From: Diadema antillarum | Taxonomy: Eukaryota | Direction of reading: 5' to 3' | DNA: 64,000 bases | NCBI RefSeq assembly: GCF_040938485.1 | Contig: NW_027270999.1 | Span: 1,860,001-1,924,000 of the forward strand | Shown: one piece after another, positions 15,111 through 63,137 of the stretch | Numbering within the stretch: the first letter of the stretch is position 1 | Layout: every line of letters begins with the position of its first letter | Notes under the pieces: generated by a model | What the model was told of the DNA's origin: nothing | Databases searched by the model: none | Seen by the model: only the letters and a program-made list of their open reading frames with translations | Program-made: the position numbers and the translations under genes

Positions 15111-16994
15111 CTCTCCGAATTGACCTCACCATTCTCTCCCACACCCCGCCCATGTGACTTGCCGTTGGGGTGTTTAAAGTCCAGTTTATTCCTTGATCAA
15201 GAAGGTAGTTGTTCACCTTGGACTGGTTGAGGGACTCCAAGCTCTCTCGCAACTATTTTTCTGCGCCCCTAAAATTTGTCCCATTGTCACTCACTATCTT
15301 CTCGGGCTTGCCTCTCCTAGCAATGAATCGTTTCAAAGCGTTGACGAAAGAATCCATTTCGAGCAAGTGAGCGACTTCAACATGAACTGCTCTGCTGTTC
15401 ATGCAGGTGAACAAACAGCCATACCTCTTTACTGTGCCATGGCCTTGTTTTTACCAGAATTGGTCTGAAATAGTCGACTCCTACATATGTGAAGGAAGGC
15501 TTGGCTGGTGTAAGTCTGTGCAACGGAAGCTCTGCCATCATCTGTTTCATTCTCGGTGCATTCCTCCTCTCGCACCTGAAACATTTTCCTACAACCTTCC
15601 TCACTGCAACTCCTCTCATCACGCAATACCTGGTTTTCAGGGGAGACCACGTCATTTCTGCTCCAGAGTGTCCTTCCAGATGATGGTACAGTGTGAAATG
15701 AGCCTCGTAACGTGATGTTCATGAGGCAAGATGACGGGATGTTTCTCATCGTTGTCAAAAGGAGCATTGCTGAGCCTGCCACCTATTCGGACGATTTTGT
15801 CTACTATGATTGGATTCAGCTTTTTCAAAGCACAGCCTTTCAGATCCTTGCCATCAAGATAATCACCAAACACACCTCTTTGCACGATTTTGATGATGTC
15901 TCTCTCAGCTAGCATCAGCTCTTCTGCTGGCAATGAAGACTTCAACTTTCCATTCTGTTTACCCTTTGCCTTGGCGAGAAACCACCTCTTGTAGCAGAGA
16001 AGCCATGCCACGACTCCCTTCAACCCTTCAATTTATTCCATGAAAAATATCTACTGAAGAGATCTTGCAAGTTACCTCTCAGTGAAGTAGCATACACATG
16101 GATTTCTTTCTTCACTTCTGGGTCACTTCGTGCAAGCTTTAGCACTTCTTGAGGTGTAGGCCAGAATTTCTATTCCTTCATGAGGAAATCCGGTCCGGTG
16201 ATCCATCGTTGATTGTTGAGAAGCTCTGATGCTTTCAGACCTCAAGATCCGTCATTTGCTGGATTTGATTTGGTGTCAGCATGTCTCCATTGTTCAGGTT
16301 CTGATGCCTTGTGGATTTGAGCAACTCTGTTTGTGACGAATGTCTTGAACCATCTGCATTTACTTTGTATGTACTGAAGCACCACTGTAGAATCGGTCCA
16401 GAACACGGTCTCATCGATATTGACTCCCACCTCACGTTTGATGCATTGGTCTATAGTCACTGCAAGGACAGCAGCCATCAGTTGCAGTCTTGGAATTGAA
16501 ACCACCTTCATGGGTGCTAATCTAGCCCTCCGTAAGACAAACGCACAATGTACTTCACCTGATCTGTCTGTCAGGCTCAAGTAGGACACAGCCGCATATC
16601 CAAGTTCAGATGCATCACAGAAGTGGTAGAGTTGAGCGGATTCAAGTTCTTGGAATCCCTCCTGCTTCAGACACCTACTTATCTGGATCTTGGTCAGCAA
16701 AGGCAAATCACTCAGCCACTCTTGCCACTGTTTTCCTTCTTCCAGTGAAATCTTTGCATCCCAAGTCGAATCCTATCTGCATAGGTTCTGTAGGAGTACC
16801 TTAGCTGGTAGCACGAATGGGGCGAGGAAACCCGATGGGTCATAAAGGGAGCTTGCAACAGACAAAATCCTGCATCTTGTTGCCGGCTTCTCCTTTACCT
16901 GGACCATGAACTTGAAAGAATCTGTTTCCATGTTCCACATGATGCCAAGGGTTTGTTGAACTGGTAAATCCTCTTTAGATCTAGGTTCAGCGCT

Positions 16995-17357
16995 GACTCA
17001 ACCCTTTCCGACTCAGGAATGGACGTCTCAAGGACGTCTCGATCATTGCAGAGCCATTTTGTGAGTCTGAAACCTCCTTGTGCTTGAAGATGCCTCAGAT
17101 CTTCCACTAGACTCATTGCATCATCTCGGCACTTCATTGACTTTAAACAGTCGTCAACGTAAGAGTTGTTCAGGACTCAACCCTTTCCGACTCAGGAATG
17201 GACGTCTCAAGGACGTCTCGATCATTGCAGAGCCATTTTGTGAGTCTGAAACCTCCTTGTGCTTGAAGATGCCTCAGATCTTCCACTAGACTCATTGCAT
17301 CATCTCGGCACTTCATTGACTTTAAACAGTCGTCAACGTAAAAGTTGTTCAGGACTC
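16995..17357. repeat. 179-bp near-perfect tandem duplication inside BEL RT, including the YVDD motif
   Basis: 16995-17173 repeats at 17174-17352, with GACTC microhomology at the junctions. I noticed one substitution (NNSYVDD vs NNFYVDD). Confidence 0.9.
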
Positions 17358-20300
17358 TATCAATGACTTCTTTGTTGAACTGTCCCCGAGCATCCTCGTG
17401 CAAACCCTGCACAACTTGGCGAAGAAGTCGCACCAAAAAGATGTACTGTCATGCGATATTCTGTAGGCTCCTTGGATAGGTCACCATCCCTCTACCACAG
17501 GAATCTCATCGCATCTGTGTCTTTGACTGAAACCTTGAATTGGTGGAACAGCCCTTGCACGTCTGCAACAAAGGCAACTCGTTCCTGCCTGAATCTTGTA
17601 AGTACTCCAGTCAAGTTGTTGGTTAGATCAGGCCCTTGTAGTACTTGATCGTTGAGAGCTGTGCCATGACAGCGAGCAGCGCAATCAAAGACTACTCTCA
17701 CCTTCACCGGTTTGTGTGGATGCATGACTGCATGGCATGGGAGGTACCACTTCAACTCCTTAGGTTCCTTTGATTTCTTTTCTCCATCGTCTGAACTCTT
17801 GGATTGGTGATCAGACTCGTCTTTCACCTCTCCAGCTTCCATGTGAGGTACATGTAGTTCAAGATGACTTCTGCCAGATAGGGATTGGACGGCATCTCAG
17901 GTGGCCAATATCACCATGGTAGGCTGACTTCATGATGATTACCAACCTTCCTTGCTGTATTTTCCATCATCTTCAGTGCCCGCTGGTCCTTGATTGACAT
18001 GCCCGTCCTCTCCTCCTGCAGATAGCCTCCAAAAGCCAGCTCCCAAAACTTTCAGTTGGCTGTGGCGAGGATCTTCTTCGTCTCTTACAAGTTGACACTA
18101 ACTGATGAGGATTCTGCTCTTTGATGACGTATGACATTGGTCCTAACAGACTCCATCCCAATGTTGTGTGCACAGCATATGTCTCCTTAGGATTGCCCCT
18201 ACATTGGTCTAACACCCAGAAAGCTTCTGGGGTGTCTCCTCCAATCAGAAGCTGTACATCTTCCTCATCAATGCAGGGTAGTGTGATCCCCTTCAAGTGT
18301 GGCTATCCTGCCAAGTCTGCCTGTGTAGGAATGCAAGTGTGTGAGATATTCATCTCCTTGACAGTCCAAACCTTCAGAAGATTGATGTTCTCTCTGTCTG
18401 TGATGTTGCTCACCATCAGCCCAACTTCCAAGCCCTTCTGGTTTGATAGACTGTTACCGACAGTGGTCAACTGGAAGTCTTTTGGAGCTCCTTGTATGCC
18501 TACGGTAGCTGCTTCACCTGTCACTTCGTCTGTCACTTCGTCTGTCACTGCAGAGAGACACGTCACTCCCTTCATCCAGTAATCCCCACGCTAAGATTAC
18601 TTGGCCATTTGCTGCAACATTTACAGGAACAACACGGAGGCAGACCTTTCTCCTCAATGAAGATGTGCTGAGACATTGACCTCCGTCTGTCTTGGATGTC
18701 GTCGGATCACTGGTTGCAGTCGCCGTGCTGGTCCCAGTAGAAGATGTAGGCGTGGAGGAATCATTTTGTCTTTGTTCCTTCTTTCCACTTTGTGGAGGGT
18801 GAAGAAGTGTGTGATGTTTCTTGTGGCAACCAGCTTTTTCACACTGCGGTTTTCTTAAACATCCAACAGCAAAGTGAGAAGGTTGGAGACAGTTATCACA
18901 CAGATGTAGTCGCCTGGTCAGTTTGATACGCTCAGAAAAGGGTCTTTCCTTAAACTTCTGGCATCTCTGGAGTCCATGCTGCTGGTCACAGCAAGAACAT
19001 TTTACACTCTGTGGGTGTGCATTGGTAGTCTCACCCTTCATACTTGCTTGAGTGGTGAAAGTCATCCATTGAGGTTCCTTCTTTGGCCCACTTCCGACAG
19101 CAGTCTTTGGTGACTTCCTTATGTTCTGTCCGAACATGTTGCTCGCAAGCTTTGCAGACTGCTCGATGAACTCAGTCATGCTCTCGAAGCTTGGGCAGAC
19201 CCCGTTGCTCATCATCCTGTGTGCCTGCTTGGCCCACTCAGATTGTAGGTGCATTGGTAGGAGGTCTTGGATCTGGAGAAGATTGTCAGAGCTATTCATA
19301 TCGGCTGAAAATCCCATTTGGCAGAGGACCATTTGACATCGGCGCATGTCCCTTGCCAAGATCCACAGTCTCACTCCATCTTTCGGCTTCACCTGTGGTC
19401 GATTCAAAACCTGCTGTATATGAGAATGAGAAACAGCATATGGTTGGCCAAACTGCTCATCCAAAATCTCTCTGGCCTTACACTAACCTTCCCTTGCACC
19501 CAACAAAACACAATTCTCAATGTTTTGTCTTGCCTTACCAGTACAGTATCGTATCAGATATGTTAGTCTCATACGATCAGCACATGCCTTGTCTCCTATG
19601 ACTACATCAAAATTGTTCATAAAACTCCAATACTCTACTGGATTACCACTGAATGTCACCAGCTCTGGTTTTGGCATATTCATTGCCAAATTGAAGGCCT
19701 GAAACATATGAGACATATTATTATCAAGAGTAGCAGCATCATTTTCACATTTATAATCTCTACTTGAGAAAATGGGGGTATGTGGGTTGAACTCTTTCTT
19801 TACTGTTGGGGAGGATTCAAGATTTCTACTCTCTACTTGAACATCCTGATTTTGCACATCAACTTCTTTAAGAGGCTCACCTGAATGAAGTTCTTCATTT
19901 ACTACCTCTTCTGCCCACAATTTTTCTTCTACACTTCTGTATTTGCGAACTCATCCTCGATCTCCATCCTAGCCAACTCTTGACCTAACTGAAACTGTTC
20001 CAATTTCATCCTTTGTGATCTTTCAAATTGCACTTTCGTGAGTTTGGCCAGTTCCTTTTTCACTTTAACCTCCCTTAGCCTTGTAGACAATGAACTCGCA
20101 CTGCTCCTTCGAGATGACCGACTGCTAGTCGTGGTCGCAGGCCTCACAGAAGCGTTGTCGTCATGTCGAACTGATTCAGCGCCACGCCTCTCTCCAGCCT
20201 CCTTCCAGTCCTTCAGTCTGCCACGAAACTCCTCTATGTTCTCCTTGCTCTGTTCAAATTTCTGTAATGCAGCTTCTGCATCAGCACCAACTAGCTTGCT

Positions 20301-20394
20301 GTGATATTCTCTGAATCTGCCTTCATACAGCTGGAATACACTTTTAAGCCGAGTGTACTTCTTCAAAACTGCATCCTTGTTATCAATAAGAACA

Positions 20395-20674
20395 TTGAGT
20401 TGCTTATACATTCCAGAGATGCTTCCCAGGTAGCCTTGACAGCACTGTCGCAATGATTTAACCTCATCTTGAGCTGGTTGAGAGATTTCAGATTCATGTT
20501 CATTGCTCTCCGTTGTGAACCATCCATATAGTTTTGAGTTGCTTATACATTCTAGTGATGCTTCCCAGGTAGCCTTGACAGCACTGTCGCAATGATTTAA
20601 CCTCATCTTGAGCTGGTTGAGAGATTTCAGATTCATGTTCATTGCTCTACTTTGTGAAACCATCCATATAGTTT
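20395..20674. repeat. ~139-bp tandem duplication in the BEL gag 5' region
   Basis: TTGAGTTGCTTATACATT...CATCCATATAGTTT occurs at 20395 and 20534, with several mismatches. Confidence 0.85.
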
Positions 20675-20808
20675 CAAGGGAGCGACATGAGTTGGAGTGT
20701 GAACTTTAAAAATCTAGCCTTGTCCAGAGGACCTTTACTACAATTGTAGATTTAACGTTGCAAAGGCACTGTCCATACACGCACAGTCAGAATCTGAATC
20801 GTAACACT

Positions 20809-44224: not shown

Positions 44225-44350
44225 TTAAGTTATACCCACATCTCACTGTATATGCCACAGTTCCCTTGAGGTGCTCAAATTTATTTGATATCTATACATT
44301 CTTGTTCCCTTATTTTGGCGATACACTGATTACTGCCAGGATGCAAAGAA

Positions 44351-44542
44351 NNNNNNNNNNNNNNNNNNNNNNNNNNNNNNNNNNNNNNNNNNNNNNNNNN
44401 NNNNNNNNNNNNNNNNNNNNNNNNNNNNNNNNNNNNNNNNNNNNNNNNNNNNNNNNNNNNNNNNNNNNNNNNNNNNNNNNNNNNNNNNNNNNNNNNNNNN
44501 NNNNNNNNNNNNNNNNNNNNNNNNNNNNNNNNNNNNNNNNNN
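44351..44542. other. Assembly gap (192 N)
   Basis: Run of N characters. Confidence 0.99.
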
Positions 44543-44703
44543 CAATATAAAAACTCCGTTAGAGACGTAAATTTGACGAATTTTCGCCCATAGGGCTTTG
44601 TCAAGTCAATACATTTAATCATTTAATCATTTAAATGTATTGACTTGACAAAGCCCTATGGGCGAAAATTCGTCAAAGTTACGTCCACGGAGTTGTTATA
44701 TTG
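44543..44703. repeat. Near-perfect ~160-bp hairpin (arms 44543-44618 and 44631-44703)
   Basis: TTTGACGAATTTTCGCCCATAGGGCTTTGTCAAGTCAATACATTTAA is followed after a 12-nt spacer by its reverse complement. Confidence 0.85.
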
Positions 44704-47748: not shown

Positions 47749-50700
47749 CTACGGCTCGTAGGTGAGGACATGAACGCTCCCGTCGGAGTAGCACGGAATG
47801 ACCACCTCAACGTTGCCATCGCCGTCGAGATCATGAACGGTTGGCGCACCCACGGTTCCATCCGTAGCCTCGAATATGGACCTCTTCGTGTAGCTCCAGT
47901 TGTTGGTGTCGGAGTCGTTCTCCGATTCGAACACGTAGATGTTGCTGTCGTCGTCACCGGTTAGCATTATCAGGGGCTTGTTCCTGAACAAAACACCATT
48001 TGAAGCAAAGTAGATTAGCATCTAACAACACCAGAAATGATTATTTTACAAAATGATAATAAAAAGGATGATAAGAAAGCATTCCTTTCTCCCTTCACTT
48101 TTCTCCTCTCTCTTTCTTCCTCATTACTACCGTTATCAGTGGTTACAAAAGTTTGACTTTGGTATATAATCTTGAAAATACCATGACATGAATATCTCCC
48201 ATCATGTGCATCTCTGACTTAAGTATTTCTTTAATTGGACAAATGATCGGAAAGTTATTGTCAGAAAAGATTCCATGGTTATGGACGTTAAAATGCGACG
48301 GCAACACAACAGCAACACAACAGAAGACAGAAGTAAACACAAGGATACAACAACCGGCAGATTAAAATGTGTACAGAAACAGTTGCGCAGCAACCTGAGG
48401 AAATTAGGCTTACTTGAAAAGAGACAAAGCGAGACCAAAGCGATGATAACCTCGTGATATTGGGAAATAGTAGCGATGAGTTAATGGGAAATGTATCGAT
48501 TAGGGACTTTCAAAGGGTTTCCAATGGATATAATTCTGCTCAGAAGTCACATTTCTATGACAAAATTTGCTCTCAGCCCATGAGATGCAAGAGTTTCAGT
48601 AGCTAATAACAACTATCTGAACTTGTTATTGATAACGACTTTCATGAAACGGGTCCTGAAGGCCTCTCTAAGACTGACCTGTACGTCCCGTCTGGCTGGA
48701 AGGTGAAAGTGGTTCCGGGTGAACCCATACCCTCAGTCACGACCAGACCAGGGGGCTTGAAACCTTCAGCGATCAGGTGTCGAGTCCACGTGCCAGTCGC
48801 CCAGTTATCGGGGATTTCAAACACGACCAGTTGACCATTTGATTTACTGTGGAAATGAAGTATTTTATATTACAAGGAGTAGAGAGGACACTGAACGGAT
48901 GTGTTCAATATACATAGTGAGAGGAAATTCTGCGGGGAATGTTGATTTAAAGGCAACAATTGTATATAAGATCAATTAAATAATTACACAAAAATGGCTA
49001 AACATGAAAGGAATTAGATGGAATAACGGTATATCACGTTTCTGTATGTTAGTGTACATTTTAGTTTTTACAGGAATTTTAAAGTAAAAGATGAATTGGT
49101 ATCGTGATTGCGACTTTGTATATACGTTAAACTCCACAACACCCTCTTCCTGATATATTTGATATGATTTGCTTCGTATTCCCGACTGTTGCCTTTATTT
49201 CAAAGTATATACTATCCTACATTGTAGCTATAGATCAGATTATTTTTATTTCATTCTTGTTTAAAAGCGATCATTCTAAACACCTGTTGATGGAGACTAG
49301 GAGGTCCTTTCTGCCGTCTCCGTTGATATCAACGTACTGAAATACAGGAAATGATAACGAACAATAAACAAGGGTCATAATTTGATTACTAGTATACGCA
49401 ACAATGGAACATGATCATAATACTATATACTTCAAACAAAGGCATAAGTACAAGACACTTTCAACCCGTTCATACGAACTTTTCTGACGGCAATTTATCT
49501 TTGCATTCAACGTCAGCGATGGTATTAGAATTGATATAATTTTGTATACATTGAATACAGATGTGGGTGACTCATTATTTCTATACAAATGTATCAGAAG
49601 CTGGTATACTGCTGTACCAAGTCTCAAAATGGTCACATAATGTACAAATAACATCCACACACACACACACGCACACACACATACACACACACAAAGGAAA
49701 CTATTTGAAAACCAAGAAGTAATCTATCATTAGAACAAGAATGTAGGCCCCACATTTATTCCGACCCATGTAATCACCATGACAATCTACATCATCCTAA
49801 ACTTAAACTGAAACTATCTATGTATTAAGTTCAATGTCAGAGGAGAATTTTGGTTTACCTCACAGTCGAAATATCGATTATCGGCAATCGCCTCAATAGT
49901 ACGGTGGTTCAAGTTCTTGAAATTTGGCTGATCTGCAAAAAATGAAAAAAAAAATCGATTGTTTTGTTTTTATCAAGAAAAAAATAAATCCTGTGCAAAT
50001 GCACTGATATTCGATAAGTTTTTTTTTTTGTGTGTGTGTGTGTGTGTGTTGTATTTTCCCTGGCTTTCTAATACTGAATTTTGTCATCAAAGTTTATGTC
50101 GATAAGTCAAACAATGTAATGTATATAGACGTAATGATGTAACGATATTACAGAAAAATGATTGCGAAGATAAACGCTTTACTTTCTCGCACTGATTGTT
50201 TCAAAAATGAATTCTGATGATTTCTGCCACCGGTATCAACATCATCATCATTGTCACCATCAGATGAATATTGAAAGAGATATTTTAAACTATCTGATTG
50301 ATTAGATAAACGAATAATTATTTAATCAGCAATCAATATATTAAATTTGTCGCAATTTAAACAGTATAGTACAACCGAAAAAATACCCTAATAGTACTTT
50401 GAAACACGATAGCAAGATGGAGAATTCTTTAGAGCAAAAATTCGTCAATATACCCACCGTCGTCGGACCAGGAGGCGACCAGTTTCTCGGCAAAGTACTG
50501 CGTGCTGAAGATGGCCGTACGCGTGACCCATGGCGACATCGGTATCTCCTCGTAACGGAAAAGGGCATCGGGACCCTCGAAGAGCGTGTCAACATCCCAT
50601 GTGGTGGAGATGGGATTCATCCGTGGCTGACTGAAGTACACCATCTCTGCCAATGTCGTTGAGGCGGATGCTAAAGATTCAGGAAAGGAGGGAGTGGGCG

Positions 50701-53229
50701 GGGGATGATAACGGGATGGTAATCATGGGTTCCTGTTATTACTGCATGTCACTGAGAAACAGGTGGGTGTGATGAATTATATTTGTAGCCTCATTCTGAA
50801 CATTATTTTATCAAGAGCAATAACGATGTCGATGGAAAAGTGAACAAATTGGAAAGATTAAGGTTGCTTAAAGTTATAAAGGGGGAAGTAAAATCTGAAC
50901 TCATAAGCAATGATGAGACTTATACATCGACTCAGTATCATCAGGGTTCTTGTGGCGGTAAACAGCCACGCTTTCAACGACCAACGAATCTGTTTTAATG
51001 CTCCATTAAGTGATGATTAAATCACTTTCCATTAACACAAGAATATTGCTAAATAGCGGTGTTACTAACAACCGTTGAGTACACAGAAATGCCGCAAGTC
51101 GTCCGCAAAGTTTTGTCATGTATGTAAAATGCAATATCTATATCGGATTGCCCTTGTCTACATCGGTCCTATAACTATGTTAAAACCACGAACTCTTTTT
51201 GTTTTCAATACAGTACTTCTCCACCGGACTTTCCCTGCATTTTCCCCGAGTTCATAACGAAGGATATTACCCACATGTATCGGCTCTGGCGGTGAGCATG
51301 TCTTTTCGTCCGTCACCATCGACATCGACGAAGTAGACACGATGATACCACCAGTGCTCCGTGACCGACCCAGTGGTCAGGTCGTGGTAGGGAGCCGGGT
51401 GGGCTGTGTGGAGAAAGCAACAACTGGAGAGGTCATCTTCCCTTGCAAACACTCTCTTCTCCTGTCGAACAAGATTCACTCACAAATGAAATTTACTGCA
51501 TTTCTTAAAAAGTGATGATTATACTTCATCATTTACAAGCTGATACATGTACATGATACACAATGTGGACAGGTTAATTCTATGTTACATGTTGATGTTT
51601 GATGAATACGTTGTAGAATTGAAATTGGAGTCAAATGACTCGAAATATCATACTTTCTCAGACATACGTGATTCTCTATAATATCATATTTAATTGAACA
51701 TGATTGCCACATTGCCAGACCCATTCTTTTTAGGTTTCTGTTTAACATAGTATTTGTAAAGAGAATTGTCTAAGTTGTCAAATAATATTACGATTCAAAA
51801 GTGATACCCCTCTGGTTCAACGCAGGCTCTAAACAATCAAATTAGACATTTAGATCATTTACAATTTGAATGAACACATACAATGGCTTTTCGTTCGTCG
51901 CTGTTCAGTTCACTGTATGATTATACACGTGTGGCTGCGTTTGTCTGAGTTGATTTCATGTATGTCTTTTTTGCTCTAATGAGAGTACTTTACTTAATTT
52001 TTCAGATATGATGGGAAATGCAAAATCATGATATTGGAATATCTTTTCAAAGGCATTAATACATAGATTACTCCTGCCTTCCATTAAAATAACATCCCAT
52101 AAAAAAAAGAAATAAAATAATACATTACAAAAGGTGAGTTCAAACACACAGGCCTACAGGTCATGTATACATCTTAGGTATAGAAAAAAAGCACTGTCGA
52201 GTCCAGAGGACATATTTTTCAACTTCTCGTTTAACTCTTAGCTATAAGTTGATAGTCATTCCAATAGATTAAACAGAAAATGACACTCACACGAACTGTC
52301 TGCTTCAATCACACCAATACTTCCTGCTGTTTTGCCGGGGACCAAAAATCCGTTGGCCACCCACCAATACCGATCGGTGCCGAATACATCTTCTGTATAA
52401 TGAGAAAGGGAAAGCAAGGTGGTTTCGACAAGTCCGTTTCCCCTAAAATAAGGTCAATAGTACAGTTCAGAGTGGGATTGAAAGAAAAGCAATTTACCAG
52501 GAAAGAAGAACTTGAGGCAGAAAGATGTATAGTTAGTATAGTCCTTTGTGGTTAAGGGAATTTTTTTATGAATATGAAAACTCATTAGTAATTACGGAAC
52601 GAAAAACGTGGGCGTGTCTCCATACAAATCATTACAATCAAGACAATAGTGACATCAGCTATCTCTAATATTTGGTCATGTAGAAGAAATACAAATCACA
52701 CAAACAAGCACAATCTATCTTTCTTTCATCAAAATAAAAAGCAACAATTCTTCTCGCGATCTCTGTTGGTCAGCTCGTCACATCTAAGGTCATGATTAGT
52801 TATTTCGCATAATATTTTTGCACTTCACTCCGTTTCTGTCTATTTTTCTCCTTTTCTTTTAATACTTCCTCCTCTCTCCCTACATGATGAGATGTTGATA
52901 AAGTCGTCCATACCTGGAACAGGTTCCACTTCGTTGGGCCACAGAAGACCATCAGCCAAGGTCTGTCGGGCTGAGTTCAGGTTACTACGGCCCAGCTTGC
53001 TGCCGATGTCCCTGATCACGTACACTTCGTCCGTAGACAACGGGTTGGCATTGAAGGTGCTCACGGTCAGGTCCAGCTGGTCAGGATTGTTGGGATTCTC
53101 GTGGATGGCCGAGAAGGCTGCATCATCCGCGTCGAATGAGGTTATTTCAACGTAACTATCTCCCCGGGCCGCCCCGTTGAGGGCAAGCAAGACGAGGCCC
53201 TGCGCAACAAGAAGTAAGATTCTCTCCAT
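47749..53229 (-). CDS. Uncharacterised secreted FG-GAP/VCBS-like repeat (predicted beta-propeller) protein, paralog A, 429 aa, 8 exons
   Basis: Exons (minus): 53229-52914, 52392-52291, 51403-51275, 50670-50458, 49932-49859, 49336-49284, 48846-48679, 47983-47749. Total 1290 nt, GT-AG, phases 1,1,1,1,0,2,2, TAG stop. Hydrophobic signal peptide MERILLLVAQGLVLLALNGAARG. Three DxD/NxDG loops: FVDVDGDGRKD, YVDINGDGRKD, HDLDGDGNVE. AATAAA on the minus strand at about 47572-47577. Confidence 0.88.
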
Positions 53230-54244
53230 TTTGAGTCGGGAGATGTGTCGAAGACGGTATCTCAGTGAAAATGAGAGGAGTTGTTATCTGTATCGAGTAT
53301 AGATATCACAGACACAGGAAAATATGTGTCGTTCTTCGCCAGAAGGGCGTGTTCCCAAGCAAAGCTTGTCGGTCGTCATCAGTAGAAGACGTAATACTTG
53401 GTGCTGTACAGAAAGTAACTACAAAGGTCATTAATTTACCATAAGTCTGCCACCTGAAAACTTGCTGTCTAGACAAACTGATTCTCCCTCTTGATTCAAG
53501 ATGATTCGTCTATCATCATCAAACGGAGCGTAAACCGTAATACACCCATATACAGTACATACACACATACACTCCCACACACATTTAGTTCCTATACATT
53601 GATGGTTACATTTTGAAGTCCGCCTATATAGTTCAATGAAATTTCGTCAGATTTATCAAGATTGGCGCCAGTGAGTACCAGAGTGACTAACCTCATTGGT
53701 TGATAAACAGGCACAGAAAAATATGAAGAGGATGCAGGTATGAATGAAAGCATTATGCATTATCATTTATACGATAGGAAAAGACAACAAAAATTCAGAT
53801 CAAATGAAATCAAATCAACCCAAGTATAGGGGAATGAGCATTGCAAGCGAATGTGAACTAATTGCATTCTAGGTCTTCTATACTTGTGCTCACAGCCGGA
53901 GCACGAATTTTAGGCAAGGTTCACACAATATTGTATTTTTGTTTTTCTAACGACTATAAACCAATAAATCAGAGTACCATTAGCAAATTACTGCATGTTC
54001 CCCTAACCCCCTTCCCCCTCAAAAAACCCACAACAACAAACAAGCAAAAACGAACGAACTATAAACAAAACACTGAATGAATTGAGTTTTTAACCACCTA
54101 AAGACATCTTAGCAATTTCTGCAACAGAATTGCGTATATAGTGGAGAAATACATGTGAATAATGGAGGGAAAGTCTCACAATCTTCATTCCCCTTTGGAT
54201 GTTTTGGACAACATTGAATTCTCTCATGTCAATGTTAACATGTA

Positions 54245-54276
<32 letters not shown>

Positions 54277-54309
54277 GGGAGAGGGTGGGACTTTTACCAA
54301 AGGCTTTAA

Positions 54310-54804
54310 GGAAAATTCCAGTCCAAATATAAGTTAGTTTGATCCAAGAAAGGGTAAACTATAAGGTAAAATTTTGATCTAAATCGGGTGAAAATTGAGG
54401 AAGTTATAAAATTTTGAAGTTTCGTTAATTTTTCAGGAAACAGCTCTTGCACAGTCAACATATGCAAATAGCAAAGTGAGCAAATCTTAGTATATCTAAC
54501 TGATCTCTATTCTGAAGTTATTCAACCAGGAATACCATCATGTTTCAGAATTCAATGACAAACATTGAATTTTCGTCATTTTTTTACACGATCCATGGAA
54601 AATATTGAGGCTATGCCATGGTTAGCTCACTCATTTGCATATTTATATCAACCGTATAGAAGAACTGTTTTGCTGAAATTATCAAAACTTCAAAATGTCA
54701 TAACTTTTATTTTTCATCCGATTTCAGTGAAAATTCTACCGTTTAACTGGTAAGATTTTACTCTTTTTTATCAGACTAACTTATATTTGGACTGGATTTC
54801 CCCT
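54310..54804. mobile_element. Kolobok-like MITE between the two paralog start codons
   Basis: TTAA|GGAAAATTCCAGTCCAAATATAAGTTAGT...ACTAACTTATATTTGGACTGGATTTCCCCT|TTAT. Confidence 0.7.
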
Positions 54805-55164
54805 TTATTACGACGGCCTTACAGAGAGCCAAAAGTGACAATGGACACATTAACTTCTAGCCCTCTCATTCGTTTTAATTAGGGCGTGTGATTTAAAGCC
54901 CACACTATCTAGGAATGGGGTGGATACTTTGTCCGTAGAAATGCCTCATGATGTCCGACGGCGTTTAAACTCTTAAATCATAATACAGCAGTCTTTTTCA
55001 TGATTCTCGCCTGCCGTTACATATAGTATGCCTCCAGTGTTTTCGAAAATCGCTCTCACGTGCTTGCAAATGAGATGTAGAGGTAAACAACGGATGTTGA
55101 GTAATTTCTTTCCATAATCGTAAGCGGATTACTGGCTAATGCTCTTAATACCAGCCATGAGATG

Positions 55165-55172
55165 TATATAAA
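55165..55172 (+). promoter_or_regulatory. Candidate TATA box of paralog B
   Basis: TATATAAA about 120 bp upstream of the ATG at 55290. Confidence 0.4.
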
Positions 55173-55289
55173 GCCCTCAGCACTTGTCTGAATCACATAC
55201 TTTTGGCCCTTGACACCAACAACTCAAGTTGACCACATCTGCAATATAATAAGAGGGCAAATATTTAAAATACATAAATTTCTGTGAAA

Positions 55290-55683
55290 ATGATTCGTTG
55301 GTTGGTATTATTAGTCTTGTATCCAGCCGCCATGGCTTGGACGGTGCGGAATCTCGGGCACATCGACATCCCTTTCGCTGCCTTCACCTCCGTTCTTCCC
55401 GACCCCAACACGGGAGTGGACACCGTCTCCATCAGCACATTCAACCCCGTGCCAGGCACCAAGGATAACATCTACATCGTGCGCGACGTTGGGCGACAAC
55501 TCGCCGACAACGGTGCGAACGCCCTGGTGACCGAGGTCCTCGCGGACGGCATGGTGTGGCCCAACGAGGTCGAAGAGATTCCCGGTAAATCTTAATCAAT
55601 TTGGTGATAATTATTATAACAATGACAATTGTGATTTTCTTTACCAATTAAGAGTAGACTCCCAATGGGCCCAATAAAAAATG

Positions 55684-55727
<44 letters not shown>

Positions 55728-58700
55728 CCCAGCATTACAAGGTAACACGTTTTGTTCAAGAGGGACATTAGACATCTAAGCACAGTGCGTGGTTCGAACT
55801 CCAAACAGCAGACTGGAAGTACAGCGCCTTATCCACTGTACCACAGTGTATAGAAGCCTTTTATGTTGAAGGGGAAATGCGTCTTAAAAGCGACAGTTTG
55901 AATACAGCAGTACTTGTATGTAATTTTGGATAAATTTCAAGGAAACCTGAATGGGAGTATCCCCATATATTCCAAACTAAGCTTTCATTTAAAAAAGGCG
56001 AAGCTGCAGAATGAAGTACCCCACCCCGACTGAGACGGGTGGTCTAAACTTTAAAACTGATGAAAATGCCTACGGGTAACACTGGTAACATCAATGAAAA
56101 GTTCCCGACAACAAGAAACTTAAGAAAGTTTCAATGATAGTAAATTGACACAGACACGTAAATACAACCCTGCTCGCCCCAGCGTTATTTCTCTGATATT
56201 TAGCTTGTCAAACAACAACGACAACATGATGTTGTAGAAAATGTGGTCTTTTTTAATGCATTCACTCAAGGAATATTTACTTCACCTAAGCAATATATTC
56301 AAGAACATGAATTTTTGCTTACACATGTCACAGCAACCTCGTAGCGAAATGCTACATTGCAGAAAATTCATGTGTCAAAATAGTAGGCTTTCTTTAACAA
56401 CTACGCACCTGCTTCAAACAATGGTAAAATTTACAGACAGAAATTGCCTTAACTCTGTTTAGAGCACGGTACAGCAGCAAGTACTGGTCCTGTCAGGATA
56501 AAGTATTTAATGCTAGGACAAAATGGTGTCAATTTTTTTTTCAAGAATAGTTATCAGACAAGTTTATATGCTTCTGCGTATATTTTACATTTTTGTGAAT
56601 TTTTGATGTTATTGTCTTTTCTTTACAAAATTACTACAGATTCAAAACACTGTATCGGGCCTGCACTTCGATTTGAACCATTATTTAAGTGAGAGAAGTG
56701 TGCATCATAAGTATAGAAAAAGCTATGTAGGTTATTCCTAAGTCTGCGGTATCTTAGCCTTTTCAAAACCAATTTTTCATCTAGTGAACTTCGAATTTCT
56801 CTTAGAAATTAATACCTATTCTCTAGATGATATTTCATCAGTGGTTTCTTATTTCACAAACAGTTAAAATCTGAATTTCCACTCTCGTGATTAACTATGC
56901 ACGCGACTGATATGCCAATGTATGGTATTATGCAAGTTAAAGGACAAGTCCACCTTCATATACATAAGGATTGAGAGAATGCAGCAATATTAGTAGAACA
57001 CATCAGTGAAAGTTTGATGAAAATTGCACAATCCGTTCAAAAGTTACGAATATTTTAAGTATCTGCGCAGTCACTGCTGGAAGAGAAGACTACTACAGTG
57101 TATGATGTCACATGCGTACAACTATATAAGGAATATAAAAAGAGAATTTCACAAAACTTTACTTTTTGAATAAAGTGCACATTTCTTCGACTTGATACTG
57201 ACGTATGTTAAGGGTAATATTATTCCCCTGCCTTCTGAAAGAGAGAAGTCGAGTGTTCTGTTGTTATGCGAGAAAAATTGAAATATGTTGAATTTTCTTT
57301 ATTCTTTCTTTATATCGTTGTACTCATGTGAAATCACAAGCTATAGTAATCTTTTCATCCAGCCGTGACTGAGCGGAAACTTCAAAAATTCATAACTTCT
57401 GAACGGATTGTTCGATTTTGCTCAAACTCTCACTGATGTGTTCTACTAATATTGCTGCATTCACTCAACCCACATGTCTATGAAGGTGAACTTGTCCTTT
57501 AATGACGTGTACTGTGACATCCAAGAACAATAGTTATGATCAATGTCTTCAGGTATATAGCCCCATCCATCATCAATAGAATATGGTGCCGGATACATGG
57601 CGATGTGTAATCTAATCACAAGGCCAAATTAAAATAATGCACTGTACCAGGCAAGGAATTATTCTCGGACTAATATTTGAGAAAATTTACACCTGTCCGT
57701 TCCAATTGTCTTATCTTGTCAATAGATAAATTCAGTCTTATCGGATATAACAAACACAACTCACATGTGGTGACACTGGGATACTGGTACACAATAATGT
57801 AGGCGTGTAGGCACATCATGCCGTTTTATCGTACGAGATATACAGCGACTGCGCAAAGACCCTCTTGAGCCCATAGTAACCAATGGTTTGAAGCGGGATG
57901 CAATTGTGGGATTTGCGCATGTCTGTTTCTCTCGTACTCGTATCACCCGAGTTTGGTGACGTTTTAATTGGTTATATAGCTGATTAAGGTGACCGTGTAA
58001 GTGATGGGGGGGGGGGGGGCAGAAGAAAAAATAGAAAGAAGGGAAGAGGGACAGAAGGAGGGAGAAAGGGAGTGATGAAGGAATACTGATGGATATGTTA
58101 TTCGGCGGGAGCAAGGCACACACGAGTTTACACTCAGGGATCTGTAATCGCATTAATATATTTTGCTGTACCATGATTTCGACCTTTCGCAATACGTGAT
58201 TCCACTAGATATGAAAAGCACATTATTTGTAGGATATGAAAACATGATTATACTTAACTGTCTGAAATGCTAATCATAATCAACTTTATAAAACAGCAAC
58301 TAGTAACATAAACTCTTGCTTGTCACAACAATTTCACTCAAACAACTCTTTAATACAAAGACATGAAGTCATAGAAAAGACTAAAGGAATAGCTCTTGGG
58401 TGAGCCTTTAAGTTTCAAGTTTGTATAACATTTATTTTCCATCTTTTTTTCATGTAGGAAATCACATGCATGAAATTATTGTACAGGAAGGCAGAACCTC
58501 AAAAAAGCAAAGCTTGTGGTGAGCTGCCTTTAATCTTTACATGAATCATAATTACTCTACCTTATTCTTTCGAGGCATAAACTGGATGCCATCCAGAACT
58601 CACGTACCCCTAGCCTTAGACTTTATTAATGGACGTTTAATCCTTTTCACTCAGACGACGTGTTTGGTCGCCATGGTCTGTGGTGGGTCGCCAATGGGTT

Positions 58701-59314
58701 CCTGGTCCCGACCAAAACGGACGGTAACATCGAGATCATCGAAGCAGGGAATGACACTTCCAGTGAGTGTACACAGTCAAGATAAACACTATTTACCTTA
58801 AACGTTCGCCATCAACCTGCAGTCAGTTTCTGGAAGAATCTGATGCGGTATTCAAAGTCGTATGTTTGGGGTTCTCTCTTCCCCAGGCAGGCTTCACGTC
58901 TTTCCACATTACCCCTCCCCACACACTAGCATAATAATTATAACGCCATTTTGAGCTTATTCCCATTTTGACTGATGTACCGAAAAGGAAATCATCAAAT
59001 TGGTAACGTTTTTATTGGCACCGTCCCGTATTGGTGCTTTGGGATGTTTGAATTTTAATACTCTATTTTTACGTTAATTGCGCTAATAGACCTGTCAGGC
59101 ATAATACATTTGTAATGACTAAAATTAATACATTCGCTCACATGTAGTCATCTGTTTGTCTGAAATTTTCACAAAGTCGCACCGGCCACCACCTATGACA
59201 TCACTACCCGAGTCCTCGACAGATCCAAATGGTTCTACCATCGAGTTTACTTCGTCGATATGGACAAAGACGGCCTCAAGGACGCCCTCACGTGTCGTGC
59301 ATATGTACCAGTAG
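55290..59314 (+). CDS. Uncharacterised secreted FG-GAP/VCBS-like repeat protein, paralog B (exons 1-3 only; 3' part not found in window)
   Basis: Exons: 55290-55584, 58655-58762, 59177-59314 (GT-AG, all phase 1, the same positions as paralog A). Signal peptide MIRWLVLLVLYPAAMA. Shared motifs STFNP, RDVG, LADGMVWPNEVE, WWVANGFLVP.KT.G.I and WFYHRVYFVDMDKDGLKD. Confidence 0.85.
55730..55847 (-). mobile_element. Degenerate tRNA-derived SINE head
   Basis: Minus: TGGTACAGTGGATAAG (box A) and GAGTTCGAACC (box B), then non-tRNA sequence. Confidence 0.55.
56941..57498. mobile_element. Kolobok-like MITE with long TIRs and TTAA TSD
   Basis: TTAA|AGGACAAGTCCACCTTCATA...TATGAAGGTGAACTTGTCCT|TTAA. Inverted similarity extends over more than 150 bp. 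Confidence 0.8.
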
Positions 59315-59354: not shown

Positions 59355-62300
59355 TAGTCTGGGTGCCAAAGCCACTTTTTGGGCCTAACCTTGTTTTACC
59401 GTCCACCCAATGTGTTTTGATGGCTTTACCCTATTTCGGGGGTGCTGAATCCGAATCTGGATGATGCAACTCTTGCATCCTTGAGGGTTTTGAGATATTC
59501 AAGATGGCCGCCAAAATGGCCGCCAAAACCGAAAATTCCCACGTACTTCCTTCTAAATGGTGTGAAATCGGAAATAATTGATGATTCTCCCTATTTGGAA
59601 GATGCTGAATCCGAATCTGGATGATGCAACTCATGCATCCACGAAGTTTTTGAGATATTCAAGATGGCCGCCAAAATGGCTGTCAAAATGGCCGCCAATT
59701 AAAACCGGAAATTCCCATGTATTTCCTTCTGAATGGTGAGAAATTGAAAACAATTGATGGATCTACCCTATTTCTATGGTGTTGAATCCGAGTCTGGATG
59801 ATGCAAACCTTGCATCCTTGAGGGTATTGAGATATTTAAGATGACCGCCAAAATGGCCGCCAAAATGGCCGCCAAAATGGCCGCCAATCAAAACCGGAAA
59901 TTTCTATGTATTAGCTTTTAAATGGTGAGAAATAGAAAACAGTTGATGATTTTACCCTATTTCGAGGGTGCTGAATCCGAATCTGGATGATGCACCTCGA
60001 GAAAGTCAAGATGGCCGCCAAAATGGCCGCCGAATTGGAAACTCCAATGTATTTCCTTCTTATAAATGGTGAGAAATTGATGGTTTTCGTCAATGGCACA
60101 GTTTGAACTTGCTGTATATACAGTGAAACCAGCTCTACTGGATATCTTTGAGTTGGTACGATACAAGTGTGCCAGTAATTAACCCTTCAAGACTACAGAT
60201 GCGGTTGAATAATTGCAAGATTACACTGTTTCCTCTACATATAATGGATAAGTTTTGAACACTAACAATTAATGGACAAGACATGTTCATCTAAATCATA
60301 TTGTGATAGTGATGTAGAGAAGTGTACTGAAATTACCCAACATTACCTGCCTTAATCCATGAGCAGTTTTAATCTCTTTATCCATGAACACTCAAATTGG
60401 TTATTTGGTTTATATTGGTGGTCTTGATGACATTGATGAAGACACGAGTGGGAAATTTTTATTGTTATGCTTCAATTTTTTCTTCAATATGATGTAACAT
60501 TATGTATGTGTATATGTATATAATTATGTATATATAATCTATTACAAACACACACGAGGGGACGTACAAATCACCAGGTAACGCGCCGTGAAAAAAAAAA
60601 CTAAATAAAAATCAAACGACAACATGGAAGGTAATAGTTGATAATCCAGTACTTATGAATATCATAATCGCGCAGAGTGCTTTTGAAATTACCCTTATTG
60701 ATATCTGCTATATAGTGGTCATGGATGCAACCATTTCCAATGACCTAATCAGAATATGCGACAAGTTTCACAAGAATACGAGGCGAGACTCGTCAGAATA
60801 CAAGACAAGTTTCAAGACCAAATACCAACATGCCATAATTTAATTTTGCTCTATTGATAGCCGAAAAGGATTAACTTTACATCTATGGAGCCATATTATT
60901 GGCGACCACAAGCATTATTTCATAACAATTATGCATAAAGACATTTTCAGTCGTATCTTTCTTTGCGTTTGTACGTTTCAGTATGATGTCAATATCACTT
61001 TTTTTTTCCAGTACGTGTTAAAGTTCCGTTTGAGACATATCGGAATATCTCAGTATATTACAATACCATTGTGACTGTCATTTTGACTGTCAATAAATTT
61101 TGGCTGATTTGACAAATTCGCTCAACTGAGTTGAATTCAAGAATACGAATTATTGGTTTTCACCCTGCATGGGTTTAATATCCCACTTCGCGTTGGAGCA
61201 CAATACTGCACCATTTCAGTATAAGAACATGTTAAGGAGTTTCCGTTCATACAGGACATTTATAGATGTCCGAAAACCTTCAAAGACCTTCAGCACCCTC
61301 GAAATAGGGTAAGACCATCAATTTATTTTAAAATTTTTACCATTAAGAAAAAATATATTAACATTGGAATTTCTGCCACTTATTTTGGCTGTCATCTTGG
61401 ACGTCTAAAAACCCTAAAGACTGGACGAATTTCAACAACCAAGTTTCGAGGGTGCTGAATAGGGCCTAAAATTTACCAATTTTTGACAGTTATTTTGGCG
61501 GTCATCTTGGACATCTCAAAACCCTTAAAAAAGAACACGAAAGTTGCATCAACCAGGTTCGGATTCAGCACTCTCGAAATAGAGTAAAACCGCCAATTGT
61601 TTTCAATTTTACACCATTTAGAAGGTAATATAGGGCTTACATGGAAATTTTCGTTTTTGACAGCCATTTAGGGGCCATTCTGGCGGCCATCTTTATTACC
61701 TCAAAACCCTCAAGGAAGTAAGAGCTTTATACTGGAGCTTCAAATTCAGCAAACTCAAAATAGTGTAAAACCACCAACTGTTTTATATTTTACACCATTT
61801 AGAAGGAAATAGGGGGTCTACATATGAATTTCCGTTTTTCGCGGTCATTTTTGGCGACCATCTTTATCATCTCAAAACCCTTAAGGATGCAAGAGTTGTA
61901 TCCTGAGCTTCGGATTCAGCACACTCAAAATAAGATAAAAACCACCAATTGCTTTCAAATTGTCACCATTTAGAAGGAAATACATGGGAACTTCCGTTTT
62001 GGGCGGCCATTTTAACGGCCATATTGAATATCTCAAAATCTTCAACAATGCAGGAGTTGCACCATCCAGATTCTGATTCAGCACCCTCGAAATAGGGTAA
62101 AACCATCAATTGTTTTCAATTTCTCACCATTTAGAAGGAAATACGTGGGAATTTTCGGTTTTGGTGGCCATTTTGGCGGCCATATTGAATATCTCAAAAT
62201 CTTCAAGGATGTAAGAGTTGCATCATCCAGATTCGGATTCAGCACCCTCGAAATAGGGTAAAACCATCAATTGTTTTCAACATCTCACCATTTTGAAGGA

Positions 62301-63137
62301 AATACGTGGGAATTTCCTTTTTTAATTGGCGGCCATTTTGGCGGCCATCTTGAATATCTCTAAAACTTCATGGATGCAAGAGTTGCATCATCCAGATTCG
62401 GATTCAGCACCCTCGAAATAGGGTAAAACCATCAATTATTTTTAATTTCTCAACATGTAGAAGGAAATACGTGAGAATTTCCGGTTTTAATTGGCGGCCA
62501 TTTTGGCGGCCATCTTAAATATCTCTAAAACTTCATGGATGCAAAAGTTGCATCATCCAGATTCGGATTCAGCACCCTCGAAATAGGGTAAAACCATCAA
62601 TTGTTTTTAATTTCTCAACAGTTAGAAGGAAATACATGGGAATTTCCGGTTTTGATTGGCGGCCATTTTGGCGGCCATCTTAAATATCTCAAAAACTTCA
62701 TGGATGCAAGAGTTGCATCATCCAGATTCGGATTCAGCACCTTCCAAATAGGGAGAATCATCAATTCTTTTCAATTTCACACCACTTGGAAAGAAATACG
62801 TGGGAATTTTCGGTTTTGGCGGCCATTTTGGCGGCCATCTTGAATATCTCAAAACCCTCAAGGATGCAGGAGTTGCATCATCCGGATTCGGATTCAGCAC
62901 CCTCGACATAGGGTAAATCCATCACTTGTTTTCAATATCTCACCATTTAGAAGGAAATACGTGGGAGTTTCTGGTTTTGGCGGCCATCTTGGCGGCCATC
63001 TTGAATATCTCAAAACCCTCAAGGATGCAAGAGTTGCATCATCCGGATTCGGATTCAGCACCCCCGAAATAGGGTAAAACCATCAAAAAACATTGGATGG
63101 ACGGTAAAACAAGGTTCAGCCTCTGGCACCCAGACTA
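59355..63137. mobile_element. 3.8-kb non-autonomous TIR element (TAG...CTA termini, Academ-like) with inverted subterminal minisatellite arrays
   Basis: Termini TAGTCTGGGTGCCA / TGGCACCCAGACTA, with AAA on both flanks. About 4 copies of a ~160-190-bp unit at 59425-60080 and about 11 reverse-complement copies at 61285-63080. The central ~1.2 kb is unique and has no long ORF. Confidence 0.82.

What the first reader, a model, noticed from the sequence alone, without database searches (positions are those of the whole stretch)
47749..53229. Complete, unnamed 429-aa secreted FG-GAP/VCBS-like beta-propeller gene
Seen: eight GT-AG exons splice in frame into a protein with a signal peptide, three DxD/NxDG loops (FVDVDGDGRKD, YVDINGDGRKD, HDLDGDGNVE) and Trp/aromatic-rich beta-strand motifs (WPNE, YWWVANGFLVPGK, WWYHRV, WDVDTL, WTRHLI, WSYTK). 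It has no transmembrane segment and no integrin thigh/calf region. Established: DxDxDG loops bind Ca2+ in integrin-alpha FG-GAP propellers, ITFG proteins, bacterial VCBS proteins and fungal PVL-type propeller lectins. Inference: this is a soluble stand-alone propeller that matches none of the named metazoan FG-GAP genes I know (integrin alpha, GPLD1, ITFG1/2, KPTN, CRTAC1). It could be a secreted lectin-like or pattern-recognition or matrix/biomineral protein of an uncharacterised family.
Basis: partly seen in the sequence, partly recalled or inferred. Interest (0 to 1): 0.75.

Follow-up and report, generated by a model that had tools for sequence, protein, structure and literature searches.

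The report
Unstudied secreted calcium-loop beta-propeller gene
This is a real, intact sea-urchin (Diadema antillarum) gene for a secreted seven-bladed FG-GAP/VCBS beta-propeller; its family is old and well conserved in many marine animals, some fungi, protists and a few bacteria, and I found no study of it.

Summary
On the minus strand, eight GT-AG exons (53229..47749) join in frame to 429 aa. The product is 100% identical to two RefSeq "uncharacterized protein" models of Diadema antillarum and 97.2% identical to the D. setosum orthologue. All splice sites are conserved and dN/dS is 0.10.

An AlphaFold2 model of that orthologue (pLDDT 92.9) is a seven-bladed propeller. It has an N-terminal signal-like helix, three conserved DxDxDG loops and no other domain. 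Pfam gives only FG-GAP_3/FG-GAP. No named metazoan FG-GAP family fits (integrin alpha, ITFG1/2, CRTAC1).

The closest solved fold is the catalytic propeller of fungal aldos-2-ulose dehydratase (Z about 30, 12% identity, no sequence link).

The family (about 415-450 aa) occurs in echinoderms, a hemichordate, lampreys, tunicates, molluscs, a brachiopod, a lobster, fungi, protists and a few bacterial MAGs. Every member is unnamed. Its tree follows species phylogeny.

The blades are strongly diverged. Family-invariant residues concentrate on the inferred top-face loops. This points to one conserved pocket (an enzyme or a specific ligand binder) rather than a multivalent lectin. Function remains inferred.

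A paralogue lies head to head in the window. The scan also noted a similar pair on another piece of this genome. No RNA run was listed.

The parts
52914..53229 (-). Exon 1: start ATG at 53227-53229. Signal-like segment at residues 1-23 (about 53161-53229). Closing strand of blade 7, blade 1, and the WPNE loop.
   Evidence: The AF2 model of the orthologue has a helix at 2-20 and its first strand at 25-33. The donor gtatgg is conserved in D. setosum.
52291..52392 (-). Exon 2, phase 1: blade 2, including the invariant G120-F121 of the NGFLVPGK loop.
   Evidence: One RefSeq model (P0130) carries 2 extra aa at this junction, probably from an alternative in-frame donor 6 nt downstream.
51275..51403 (-). 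Exon 3: WWYHRV strand, with H160 nearly invariant. Ca-type loop 1, DVDGDGRKD, at 51300-51326. TAR motif.
   Evidence: Per-exon Pfam FG-GAP_3 E=5.2e-05. Conservation.
50458..50670 (-). Exon 4: the end of blade 3, the invariant GPD loop and blade 4.
   Evidence: The acceptor at 50670 was fixed by comparison with P0104. My earlier acceptor at 50630 was wrong.
49859..49932 (-). Exon 5: the last strand of blade 4 and the start of blade 5.
49284..49336 (-). Exon 6: Ca-type loop 2, DINGDGRKD, at 49304-49330.
48679..48846 (-). Exon 7: FEIPDNW and WTRHLI strands of blade 5. Long loop ending in the invariant SPG.
   Evidence: One RefSeq model (P0129) is 2 aa shorter at this junction, probably from an alternative in-frame donor at 48685.
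47749..47983 (-). Exon 8: blade 6 (GDDD loop, NWSY). Blade 7 with Ca-type loop 3, DLDGDGNVE, at 47806-47832. Stop codon at 47749-47751.
   Evidence: Per-exon Pfam FG-GAP_3 E=1.3e-05.
53230..55289 (.). Spacer of about 2.06 kb between the two divergently transcribed paralogues. It is a presumed shared promoter region and was not analysed.
   Evidence: The same head-to-head layout occurs in D. setosum.
55290..55584 (+). Exon 1 of the head-to-head paralogue. It is 100% identical in protein to D. setosum XP_072173367.1 and 38% identical to exon 1 of the gene under study.
58651..58761 (+). Exon 2 of the paralogue (approximate limits from tblastn).
59164..59313 (+). Exon 3 of the paralogue (approximate limits). 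No later exon was found in the rest of the window.

Best explanation
The locus is an intact, selectively constrained gene of Diadema antillarum. It encodes a secreted, single-domain, seven-bladed beta-propeller of the FG-GAP/VCBS superfamily. Shown: the exon structure, the conservation, the fold of the 97%-identical orthologue, and three conserved DxDxDG loops in blades 3, 5 and 7. Established knowledge: in integrins and PVL such loops form the A-B hairpin on the lower face and bind Ca2+, so here they most likely rigidify the propeller. Inferred mechanism: the protein works through one conserved pocket on the opposite (upper) face. That face is built from the D-A and B-C loops, which carry the family-invariant, non-repeated residues W97-P98-N99, G120-F121, G129, H160, R179, G215-P216-D217, P339-G340, G361-D362 and T395/G397. 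I judge the most likely role to be binding, and probably chemical conversion, of a small carbohydrate-like ligand in the extracellular or luminal space. This is by analogy with the nearest fold, the catalytic propeller of aldos-2-ulose dehydratase. The gene belongs to an ancient, vertically inherited bilaterian family that also occurs in fungi, protists and a few bacteria. The family was duplicated in echinoderms, and one paralogue lies head to head in this window.
For: Gene model: eight GT-AG exons give 429 aa. It is identical to RefSeq D. antillarum models. All splice sites are conserved in D. setosum, with dS 0.12, dN 0.012 and dN/dS 0.10. Superfamily: Pfam FG-GAP_3 44.9 bits (cut-off 26.9) and FG-GAP 27.6 bits (cut-off 22.1) on the orthologue, with weak per-exon hits on the window itself. 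Fold: the AF2 model has pLDDT 92.9 and pTM 0.90, 28 strands forming 7 blades, and the N-terminal strand closes blade 7. Nearest structures: AUDH 4a7y/4a7k/4a7z at Z 29.6-30.2, 373-379 residues aligned, rmsd 3.6-3.8. The next unrelated propellers reach Z 27.2 or less. One conserved face: 19 of 95 inferred top-loop positions are at least 85% conserved, against 5 of 98 bottom-loop positions outside the Ca loops (Fisher p=0.002). Diverged blades: only the pairs 3-5, 3-7, 5-7 and 5-6 are detectably similar. Family breadth and constant length. The tree follows species phylogeny. A holothurian member stands as an uninterrupted 449-aa ORF on a 4.1-kb run-assembly contig, which is consistent with a spliced mRNA.
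Against: No experiment or paper bears on the function. I had no model coordinates, so 'top face' is inferred only from strand order and the known position of DxDxDG loops, and the clustering of invariant residues in 3D was not seen. The AUDH match is at fold level only: 12% identity, sequence E=0.4 and in a shifted register. It stands only about 3 Z units above generic seven-bladed propellers. Many invariant residues are Gly or Pro and may be structural. Bacterial gene neighbourhoods give no functional hint. No RNA run was listed for this locus, so expression of this particular copy is not shown. The signal peptide was judged by eye and from the model, not by a predictor.
Confidence: 0.5

Rival explanations
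1. It is a soluble lectin or pattern-recognition protein. It would bind microbial or dietary glycans, possibly at several inter-blade sites as in PVL or tachylectins, and act in immunity or mucus and matrix biology.
For: It belongs to the VCBS superfamily, which includes PVL and is linked to tachylectins (PMC8023676). It is secreted and stands alone as a single domain. It is tandemly duplicated in echinoderms. Photorhabdus lectin PLL5 is among the Foldseek matches.
Against: The blades are strongly diverged and there is no repeated site motif. dN/dS is 0.10, and the family has a constant length from bacteria to chordates, with one-to-one orthologues. This is unlike fast-evolving immune lectins. 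There is no Pfam Tachylectin hit.
Confidence: 0.2
2. It is a non-catalytic protein-binding module. It would be an extracellular adaptor or ligand that docks a partner protein on its upper face, in the way the LGI1 EPTP propeller docks ADAM22 or the integrin alpha propeller docks its beta subunit.
For: LGI1 EPTP (Z 26.7-27.2) and integrin alpha propellers (Z 25.5-26.0) are among the best fold matches. Integrin alpha-IIb is the best PDB sequence match (E about 3e-5). A conserved upper face is also what a conserved partner interface would produce.
Against: The family occurs in bacteria, fungi and protists with the same invariant residues. A conserved metazoan protein partner is therefore unlikely. 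The invariant polar residues (N, H, R, D, D, T) look more like a small-molecule site.
Confidence: 0.2
3. It is a silent or decaying copy, or an annotation artefact, with no function of its own. The function would be carried by the paralogues.
For: No RNA run could be listed for this stretch. Three paralogues lie on one chromosome in D. setosum.
Against: The frame is open over all eight exons. There are 12 non-synonymous against 33 synonymous differences to D. setosum (dN/dS 0.10), and all splice sites are kept. One-to-one orthologues exist in Strongylocentrotus, Lytechinus and holothurians.
Confidence: 0.03

Closest known systems
N-terminal catalytic beta-propeller of fungal aldos-2-ulose dehydratase/isomerase (AUDH; PDB 4A7K, 4A7Y, 4A7Z)
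   Same: It is a seven-bladed VCBS-type propeller of about 430 residues. It is the best structural match (Z 29.6-30.2, 373-379 residues aligned). It is the only top match in which the propeller itself is named as part of an enzyme.
   Different: AUDH is a 900-aa protein whose chain continues for about 470 residues beyond the propeller. From memory of Claesson et al. 2012, which I could not read here, the extra parts are cupin and lectin-like domains. This protein is the propeller alone and carries a signal peptide. Identity is 12%, and the profile-to-sequence match is not significant (E=0.4) and out of register. Whether the AUDH metal and substrate residues are conserved could not be tested.
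Integrin alpha-subunit head propeller (for example alpha-IIb)
   Same: FG-GAP repeats with DxDxDG Ca2+ loops. It is the best PDB match by sequence (E about 3e-5, local). The fold match is Z about 25.5-26.
   Different: There are no thigh, calf, transmembrane or cytoplasmic parts. The sequence match covers only single repeats. The family-specific motifs (WPN, FYH, GPD, SPG, GDDD) are absent from integrins as far as the local alignments show.
Psathyrella velutina lectin (PVL)-type propeller lectins
   Same: A stand-alone propeller of about 400 aa in the VCBS superfamily, with DxDxDG in the A-B loops (PMC8023676).
   Different: From memory of Cioci et al. 2006, PVL blades are closely similar and bind sugar at repeated inter-blade sites. 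Here most blade pairs show no detectable similarity, and conservation is unique to each blade. PVL did not appear among the top fold matches.
Named metazoan FG-GAP proteins: ITFG1 (TIP/LINKIN), ITFG2, KPTN, CRTAC1
   Same: The same repeat superfamily. UniProt auto-names one oyster member 'T-cell immunomodulatory protein'. ITFG2, KPTN and CRTAC1 give fold matches in the generic range.
   Different: Pfam Itfg2 scores 13.1 bits, below its cut-off of 27. CRTAC1 gives E=0.03 and ITFG2 gives E about 0.6-1.2 by sequence. There is no transmembrane segment, UnbV/ASPIC domain or EGF domain. The length and motif set are different.

Membership tests
FG-GAP/VCBS beta-propeller superfamily (Pfam PF13517, PF01839) | Significant match to the FG-GAP_3 or FG-GAP repeat models | tested here: met
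   On the 97.2%-identical orthologue P0104, FG-GAP_3 scores 44.9 bits (cut-off 26.9) and FG-GAP scores 27.6 bits (cut-off 22.1). Window exons 3 and 8 alone score 24.2 and 26.1 bits.
FG-GAP/VCBS beta-propeller superfamily (Pfam PF13517, PF01839) | Dx[DN]xDG calcium-type loops in blade hairpins | tested here: met
   There are three loops, at residues 166-171, 281-286 and 403-408 (window 51300-51326, 49304-49330, 47806-47832). They are at least 91% conserved across 33 family members. Ca2+ binding itself was not tested.
FG-GAP/VCBS beta-propeller superfamily (Pfam PF13517, PF01839) | Seven-bladed beta-propeller fold | tested here: met
   The AF2 model of P0104 has pLDDT 92.9 and 28 strands. It gives Z 25-30 to seven-bladed propellers over residues 20-429. 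The window's own joined protein was not folded.
Integrin alpha subunit | Thigh and calf domains, a transmembrane helix and a cytoplasmic tail after the propeller | tested here: not met
   The protein ends at the last propeller strand (residue 429). The only helix longer than 4 residues is the N-terminal 2-20.
ITFG2 | Pfam PF15907 (Itfg2) above its gathering score | tested here: not met
   13.1 bits against a cut-off of 27, E=0.057.
ITFG1 / TIP / LINKIN | A protein of about 610 aa with a C-terminal transmembrane segment after the propeller (from memory; see also PMC4275582, listed) | tested here: not met
   The protein has 429 aa and no transmembrane helix. No family-specific Pfam hit appears at E<=1. 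The oyster name 'T-cell immunomodulatory protein' is an automatic label. No direct alignment to an ITFG1 sequence was made.
CRTAC1 | UnbV/ASPIC domain and an EGF-like domain after the FG-GAP repeats | tested here: not met
   No such Pfam hits. The profile against the CRTAC1 chain gives E=0.03-0.04 over 24-28 residues.
PVL-type propeller lectin | Closely similar blades carrying repeated sugar-binding sites | tested here: not met
   17 of 21 blade pairs have z below 2 against shuffles. Only pairs 3-5, 3-7, 5-7 and 5-6 are similar. Sugar binding was not tested.
Aldos-2-ulose dehydratase (AUDH) | A propeller followed by the further C-terminal domains of the 900-aa enzyme (cupin and lectin-like, from memory) | tested here: not met
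   The protein has a single domain of 429 aa. The AUDH chain has 900 residues.
Aldos-2-ulose dehydratase (AUDH) | Conservation of the propeller's metal and substrate residues | not testable with these tools
   No model coordinates or structure-based residue alignment were returned, and the primary paper is not held. The sequence match is E=0.4 and out of register.

The most novel reading that the evidence does not exclude
The family is a previously unrecognised class of secreted, Ca2+-stabilised propeller enzymes acting on a small sugar-like substrate (a dehydratase-, lyase- or isomerase-type reaction at a central upper-face site). It would be shared by bacteria, fungi, protists and most marine bilaterians. 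It is retained in lampreys and tunicates, and it was not found here in jawed vertebrates.
Probability: 0.25. Interest if true: 0.65.

Novelty: new member of a known kind. Interest (0 to 1): 0.4.

Why it matters
The gene itself is already predicted in RefSeq, so the locus is not a discovery. The value lies in the family. It is a well-conserved, constant-length, secreted propeller with its own invariant motif set (WPN, GF, FYH, TAR, GPD, SPG, GDD). It is present from bacteria to lampreys, and I found no name, structure, paper or assay for it. Its distribution, strong constraint and one-sided conservation make it a tractable 'dark' protein family. One recombinant protein, one structure and a small substrate or glycan screen could assign a function to hundreds of genes in animals used as developmental and aquaculture models (sea urchins, sea cucumbers, oysters, Ciona).

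Tried and rejected
1. My first splice model (exon 3 donor 51271, exon 4 acceptor 50630, 417 aa) was in frame but wrong. The RefSeq orthologue showed 12 more residues, and the correct sites are 51275 and 50670.
2. A brute-force enumeration of splice combinations timed out.
3. The word search with exon 1 alone found nothing, as expected from its length window.
4. The look-up of sequencing runs listed no RNA run, so read laying was not used and junction reads could not be checked.
5. Exon-wise PDB sequence searches gave only FG-GAP repeat-level hits or noise.
6. NCBIfam gave no family match.
7. Gene neighbourhoods of bacterial members contain a PDZ protein, a 7TMR-DISM cyclase and a PQQ-type propeller. 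No operon logic emerges.
8. Longer diatom and metagenome relatives (670-875 aa) were tested as a possible sequence bridge to AUDH. They have no PDB hit and no Pfam domain.
9. Literature searches by accession, LOC identifier and key words found no paper on any member. The AUDH structure paper is not held.
10. Rfam found nothing in the window.
Exons were searched by reference, and the returned orthologue P0104 stood in for full-length scans and the fold. Joining was done only inside local scripts, from references, to check frame, length, identity and dN/dS.
Full report
**1. What is in the sequence**

The gene lies on the minus strand between 53229 (ATG) and 47749 (last base of the stop codon).

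I listed candidate GT donors and AG acceptors around each fragment. My first chain of eight exons was in frame but gave 417 aa. Comparison with a returned RefSeq protein (P0104) showed that the exon 3 donor and the exon 4 acceptor were misplaced.

With exon 3 set to 51275-51403 and exon 4 to 50458-50670, the eight exons sum to 1290 nt. That is 429 codons plus a stop, with canonical GT-AG at every intron.

Exons were searched by reference. Joining was done only in local scripts, to test frame, length, identity and substitution rates.

**2. Whose gene it is**

A profile of exon 1 and its in-window paralogue (A1) was run against the 1.84-billion-protein representative library. It found 78 proteins at E<=0.001. 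Among them were full-length proteins of about 420-450 aa.

Cluster look-ups and word searches named the sources:
- The window's model is 100% identical to Diadema antillarum XP_071500272.1 (427 aa) and XP_071486916.1 (431 aa).
- Those two models differ from each other, and from my model, only by 2-aa insertions at the exon 2/3 and exon 7/8 junctions. Candidate alternative in-frame donors are visible at both junctions.
- The window is therefore D. antillarum.
- The D. setosum orthologue XP_072172998.1 (P0104) is 97.2% identical, with 12 substitutions and no indel.
- All sources call these proteins 'uncharacterized'.

**3. Is it a working gene?**

In the D. setosum genome the eight exons have the same lengths and are flanked by the same AG and GT dinucleotides. 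The extracted CDS translates exactly to P0104.

Flanking and intronic DNA is only about 78-92% identical between the two species. The exons are 93-100% identical. There are 33 synonymous and 12 non-synonymous differences, giving dS 0.12, dN 0.012 and dN/dS 0.10. This is clear purifying selection.

Direct expression evidence for this copy could not be obtained, because no RNA run was listed. One holothurian family member stands as an uninterrupted 449-aa ORF on a 4.1-kb run-assembly contig, which fits a spliced mRNA. Oyster members occur as full ORFs on many contigs of about 1.5 kb.

**4. What the protein is**

- **Per-exon scans.** Pfam scans of the window's exons give FG-GAP_3 at E=5e-5 (exon 3) and E=1e-5 (exon 8), just under the cut-off.
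- **Full-length scan.** On the orthologue, FG-GAP_3 (44.9 bits) and FG-GAP (27.6 bits) pass their cut-offs. Itfg2 (13 bits against 27) does not. No other domain is present. NCBIfam has no family for it.
- **Fold.** An AlphaFold2 model of P0104, built with a 33-sequence family alignment, has mean pLDDT 92.9 and pTM 0.90. It shows a helix at 2-20 and then 28 strands.
- **Blade assignment.** I placed the DxDxDG loops between strands A and B, as in integrins and PVL (PMC8023676). The strands then group into seven blades, with the N-terminal strand 25-33 closing blade 7.
- **Secretion.** The N-terminus has a short charged stretch, 14 hydrophobic residues and then NGAARG. Every aligned homologue has a similar hydrophobic start. 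I therefore read it as a signal peptide. This is an inference; no predictor was available. There is no transmembrane helix and no hydrophobic C-terminus.

**5. Comparison with solved structures**

- By sequence, the family profile reaches only integrin alpha-IIb (E about 3e-5, single repeats), CRTAC1 (E=0.03), AUDH (E=0.4, out of register) and ITFG2 (E about 1).
- By fold, Foldseek ranks aldos-2-ulose dehydratase (AUDH) first, followed by CRTAC1, LGI1 EPTP and integrin alpha heads.
- VIA-align against 48,161 representative chains puts AUDH 4a7k first. Its Z is 29.8, rmsd is 3.6 Å and 373 residues align at 12% identity. The next chains reach Z 27.2 or less with 349 or fewer residues aligned.
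- A second look at Foldseek's top 1000 chains gives Z 29.6-30.2 for the three AUDH entries.

The AUDH propeller is thus the nearest known structure, but only by about 3 Z units over generic seven-bladed propellers.

**6. The family**

Members of about 413-450 aa, all with the same motif set, occur in the following groups:

| Group | Examples |
|---|---|
| Echinoids | Diadema, Strongylocentrotus LOC100889205 (70% identity), Lytechinus LOC129271434 (64%) |
| Other echinoderms | sea stars, sea cucumbers |
| Other deuterostomes | Ptychodera, lampreys, Ciona and Clavelina |
| Protostomes | bivalves, Patella, Lingula, Owenia, Homarus |
| Fungi | two species |
| Protists | a colponemid, Stygamoeba |
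| Bacteria | a handful of MAGs: Silvanigrellaceae, Sandaracinus, Sericytochromatia, unclassified proteobacteria |

Longer diatom relatives (670-875 aa) also exist.

A maximum-likelihood tree of 26 members separates deuterostomes, protostomes and non-metazoans with good support. It places three echinoderm paralogue groups. The window's gene and its head-to-head neighbour fall in sister groups, and each group has a holothurian member. Inheritance within animals therefore looks vertical, and the duplication is old.

Absence from jawed vertebrates, insects or nematodes was not tested exhaustively.

**7. How it probably works**

Three DxDxDG loops (residues 166-174, 281-289 and 403-411) are at least 91% conserved. 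By established knowledge they most likely bind Ca2+ and stiffen the lower face.

Outside these loops, positions that are at least 85% conserved are enriched in the inferred upper-face loops (D-A and B-C). The counts are 19 of 95 there against 5 of 98 in the lower-face loops (Fisher p=0.002). The conserved positions include N99, H160, R179, D217, D362 and T395, together with fixed Gly and Pro residues.

The blades are otherwise very different from one another. The conserved surface is therefore a single, non-repeated site.

Three things lead me to favour one upper-face pocket that binds, and perhaps converts, a small carbohydrate-like ligand:
- strong constraint on the sequence;
- constant length from bacteria to chordates;
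- the AUDH resemblance.

This is inference. I had no coordinates to see the residues in space, and no experiment exists. A multivalent lectin and a protein-docking module remain possible and are scored as rivals.

**8. Surroundings**

A paralogue starts 2.06 kb away on the plus strand. Its exon 1 is at 55290-55584, with exons 2 and 3 near 58651-58761 and 59164-59313. It matches D. setosum XP_072173367.1 at 92-100% per exon, and no later exon was found in the rest of the window. D. setosum has the same head-to-head layout.

Another note (s1-208781) reports a similar pair on another piece of the genome. I did not check it. RefSeq does place the two D. antillarum models on two different contigs.

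**9. Verdict**

The gene is already predicted in RefSeq, and its superfamily is known. It is therefore a new member of a known kind, belonging to a conserved subfamily for which I found no name, structure or assay. Interest is moderate.

Noticed in passing
window 55290-59313 (+): Head-to-head paralogue of the gene (50% protein identity to it). Only its first three exons lie in the window. The stretch after exon 3 (59355-63137) was flagged by another first-stage note as a transposon with inverted minisatellite arms, which would sit inside the paralogue's intron 3.
   Followed up: partly
window about 14600-20700 (-): A decayed BEL/Pao-type retrotransposon. The ORF at 16245-16706 matches Pfam Peptidase_A17 (Pao retrotransposon peptidase, E=1.3e-23). 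Neighbouring ORFs look like gag with a zinc knuckle and pol fragments, broken by stops.
   Followed up: partly
window 595-1092 (-): An ORF containing a peptide (…LFERYRAMFALRNRNDEES…) that reminds me of deoxyhypusine hydroxylase HEAT repeats. Pfam gave no hit at E<=0.001, so this is unverified.
   Followed up: partly
window about 44350-44550: A run of 192 N (an assembly gap or masked stretch) inside the 44281-44622 region.
   Followed up: no
window 52285-52291 and 48679-48685 (-): Pairs of in-frame GT donors 6 nt apart at the ends of exon 2 and exon 7. The two RefSeq D. antillarum models differ by 2 aa at exactly these two junctions. Which donor is used in vivo needs junction reads.
   Followed up: partly
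L004:6884-8284 (+) (metagenome contig): In one metagenomic relative's contig, the gene 8 bp downstream encodes a PQQ/BamB-type beta-propeller (Pfam Beta-prop_ACSF4, E=6e-50). This pairing is not seen in the other bacterial contexts.
   Followed up: no
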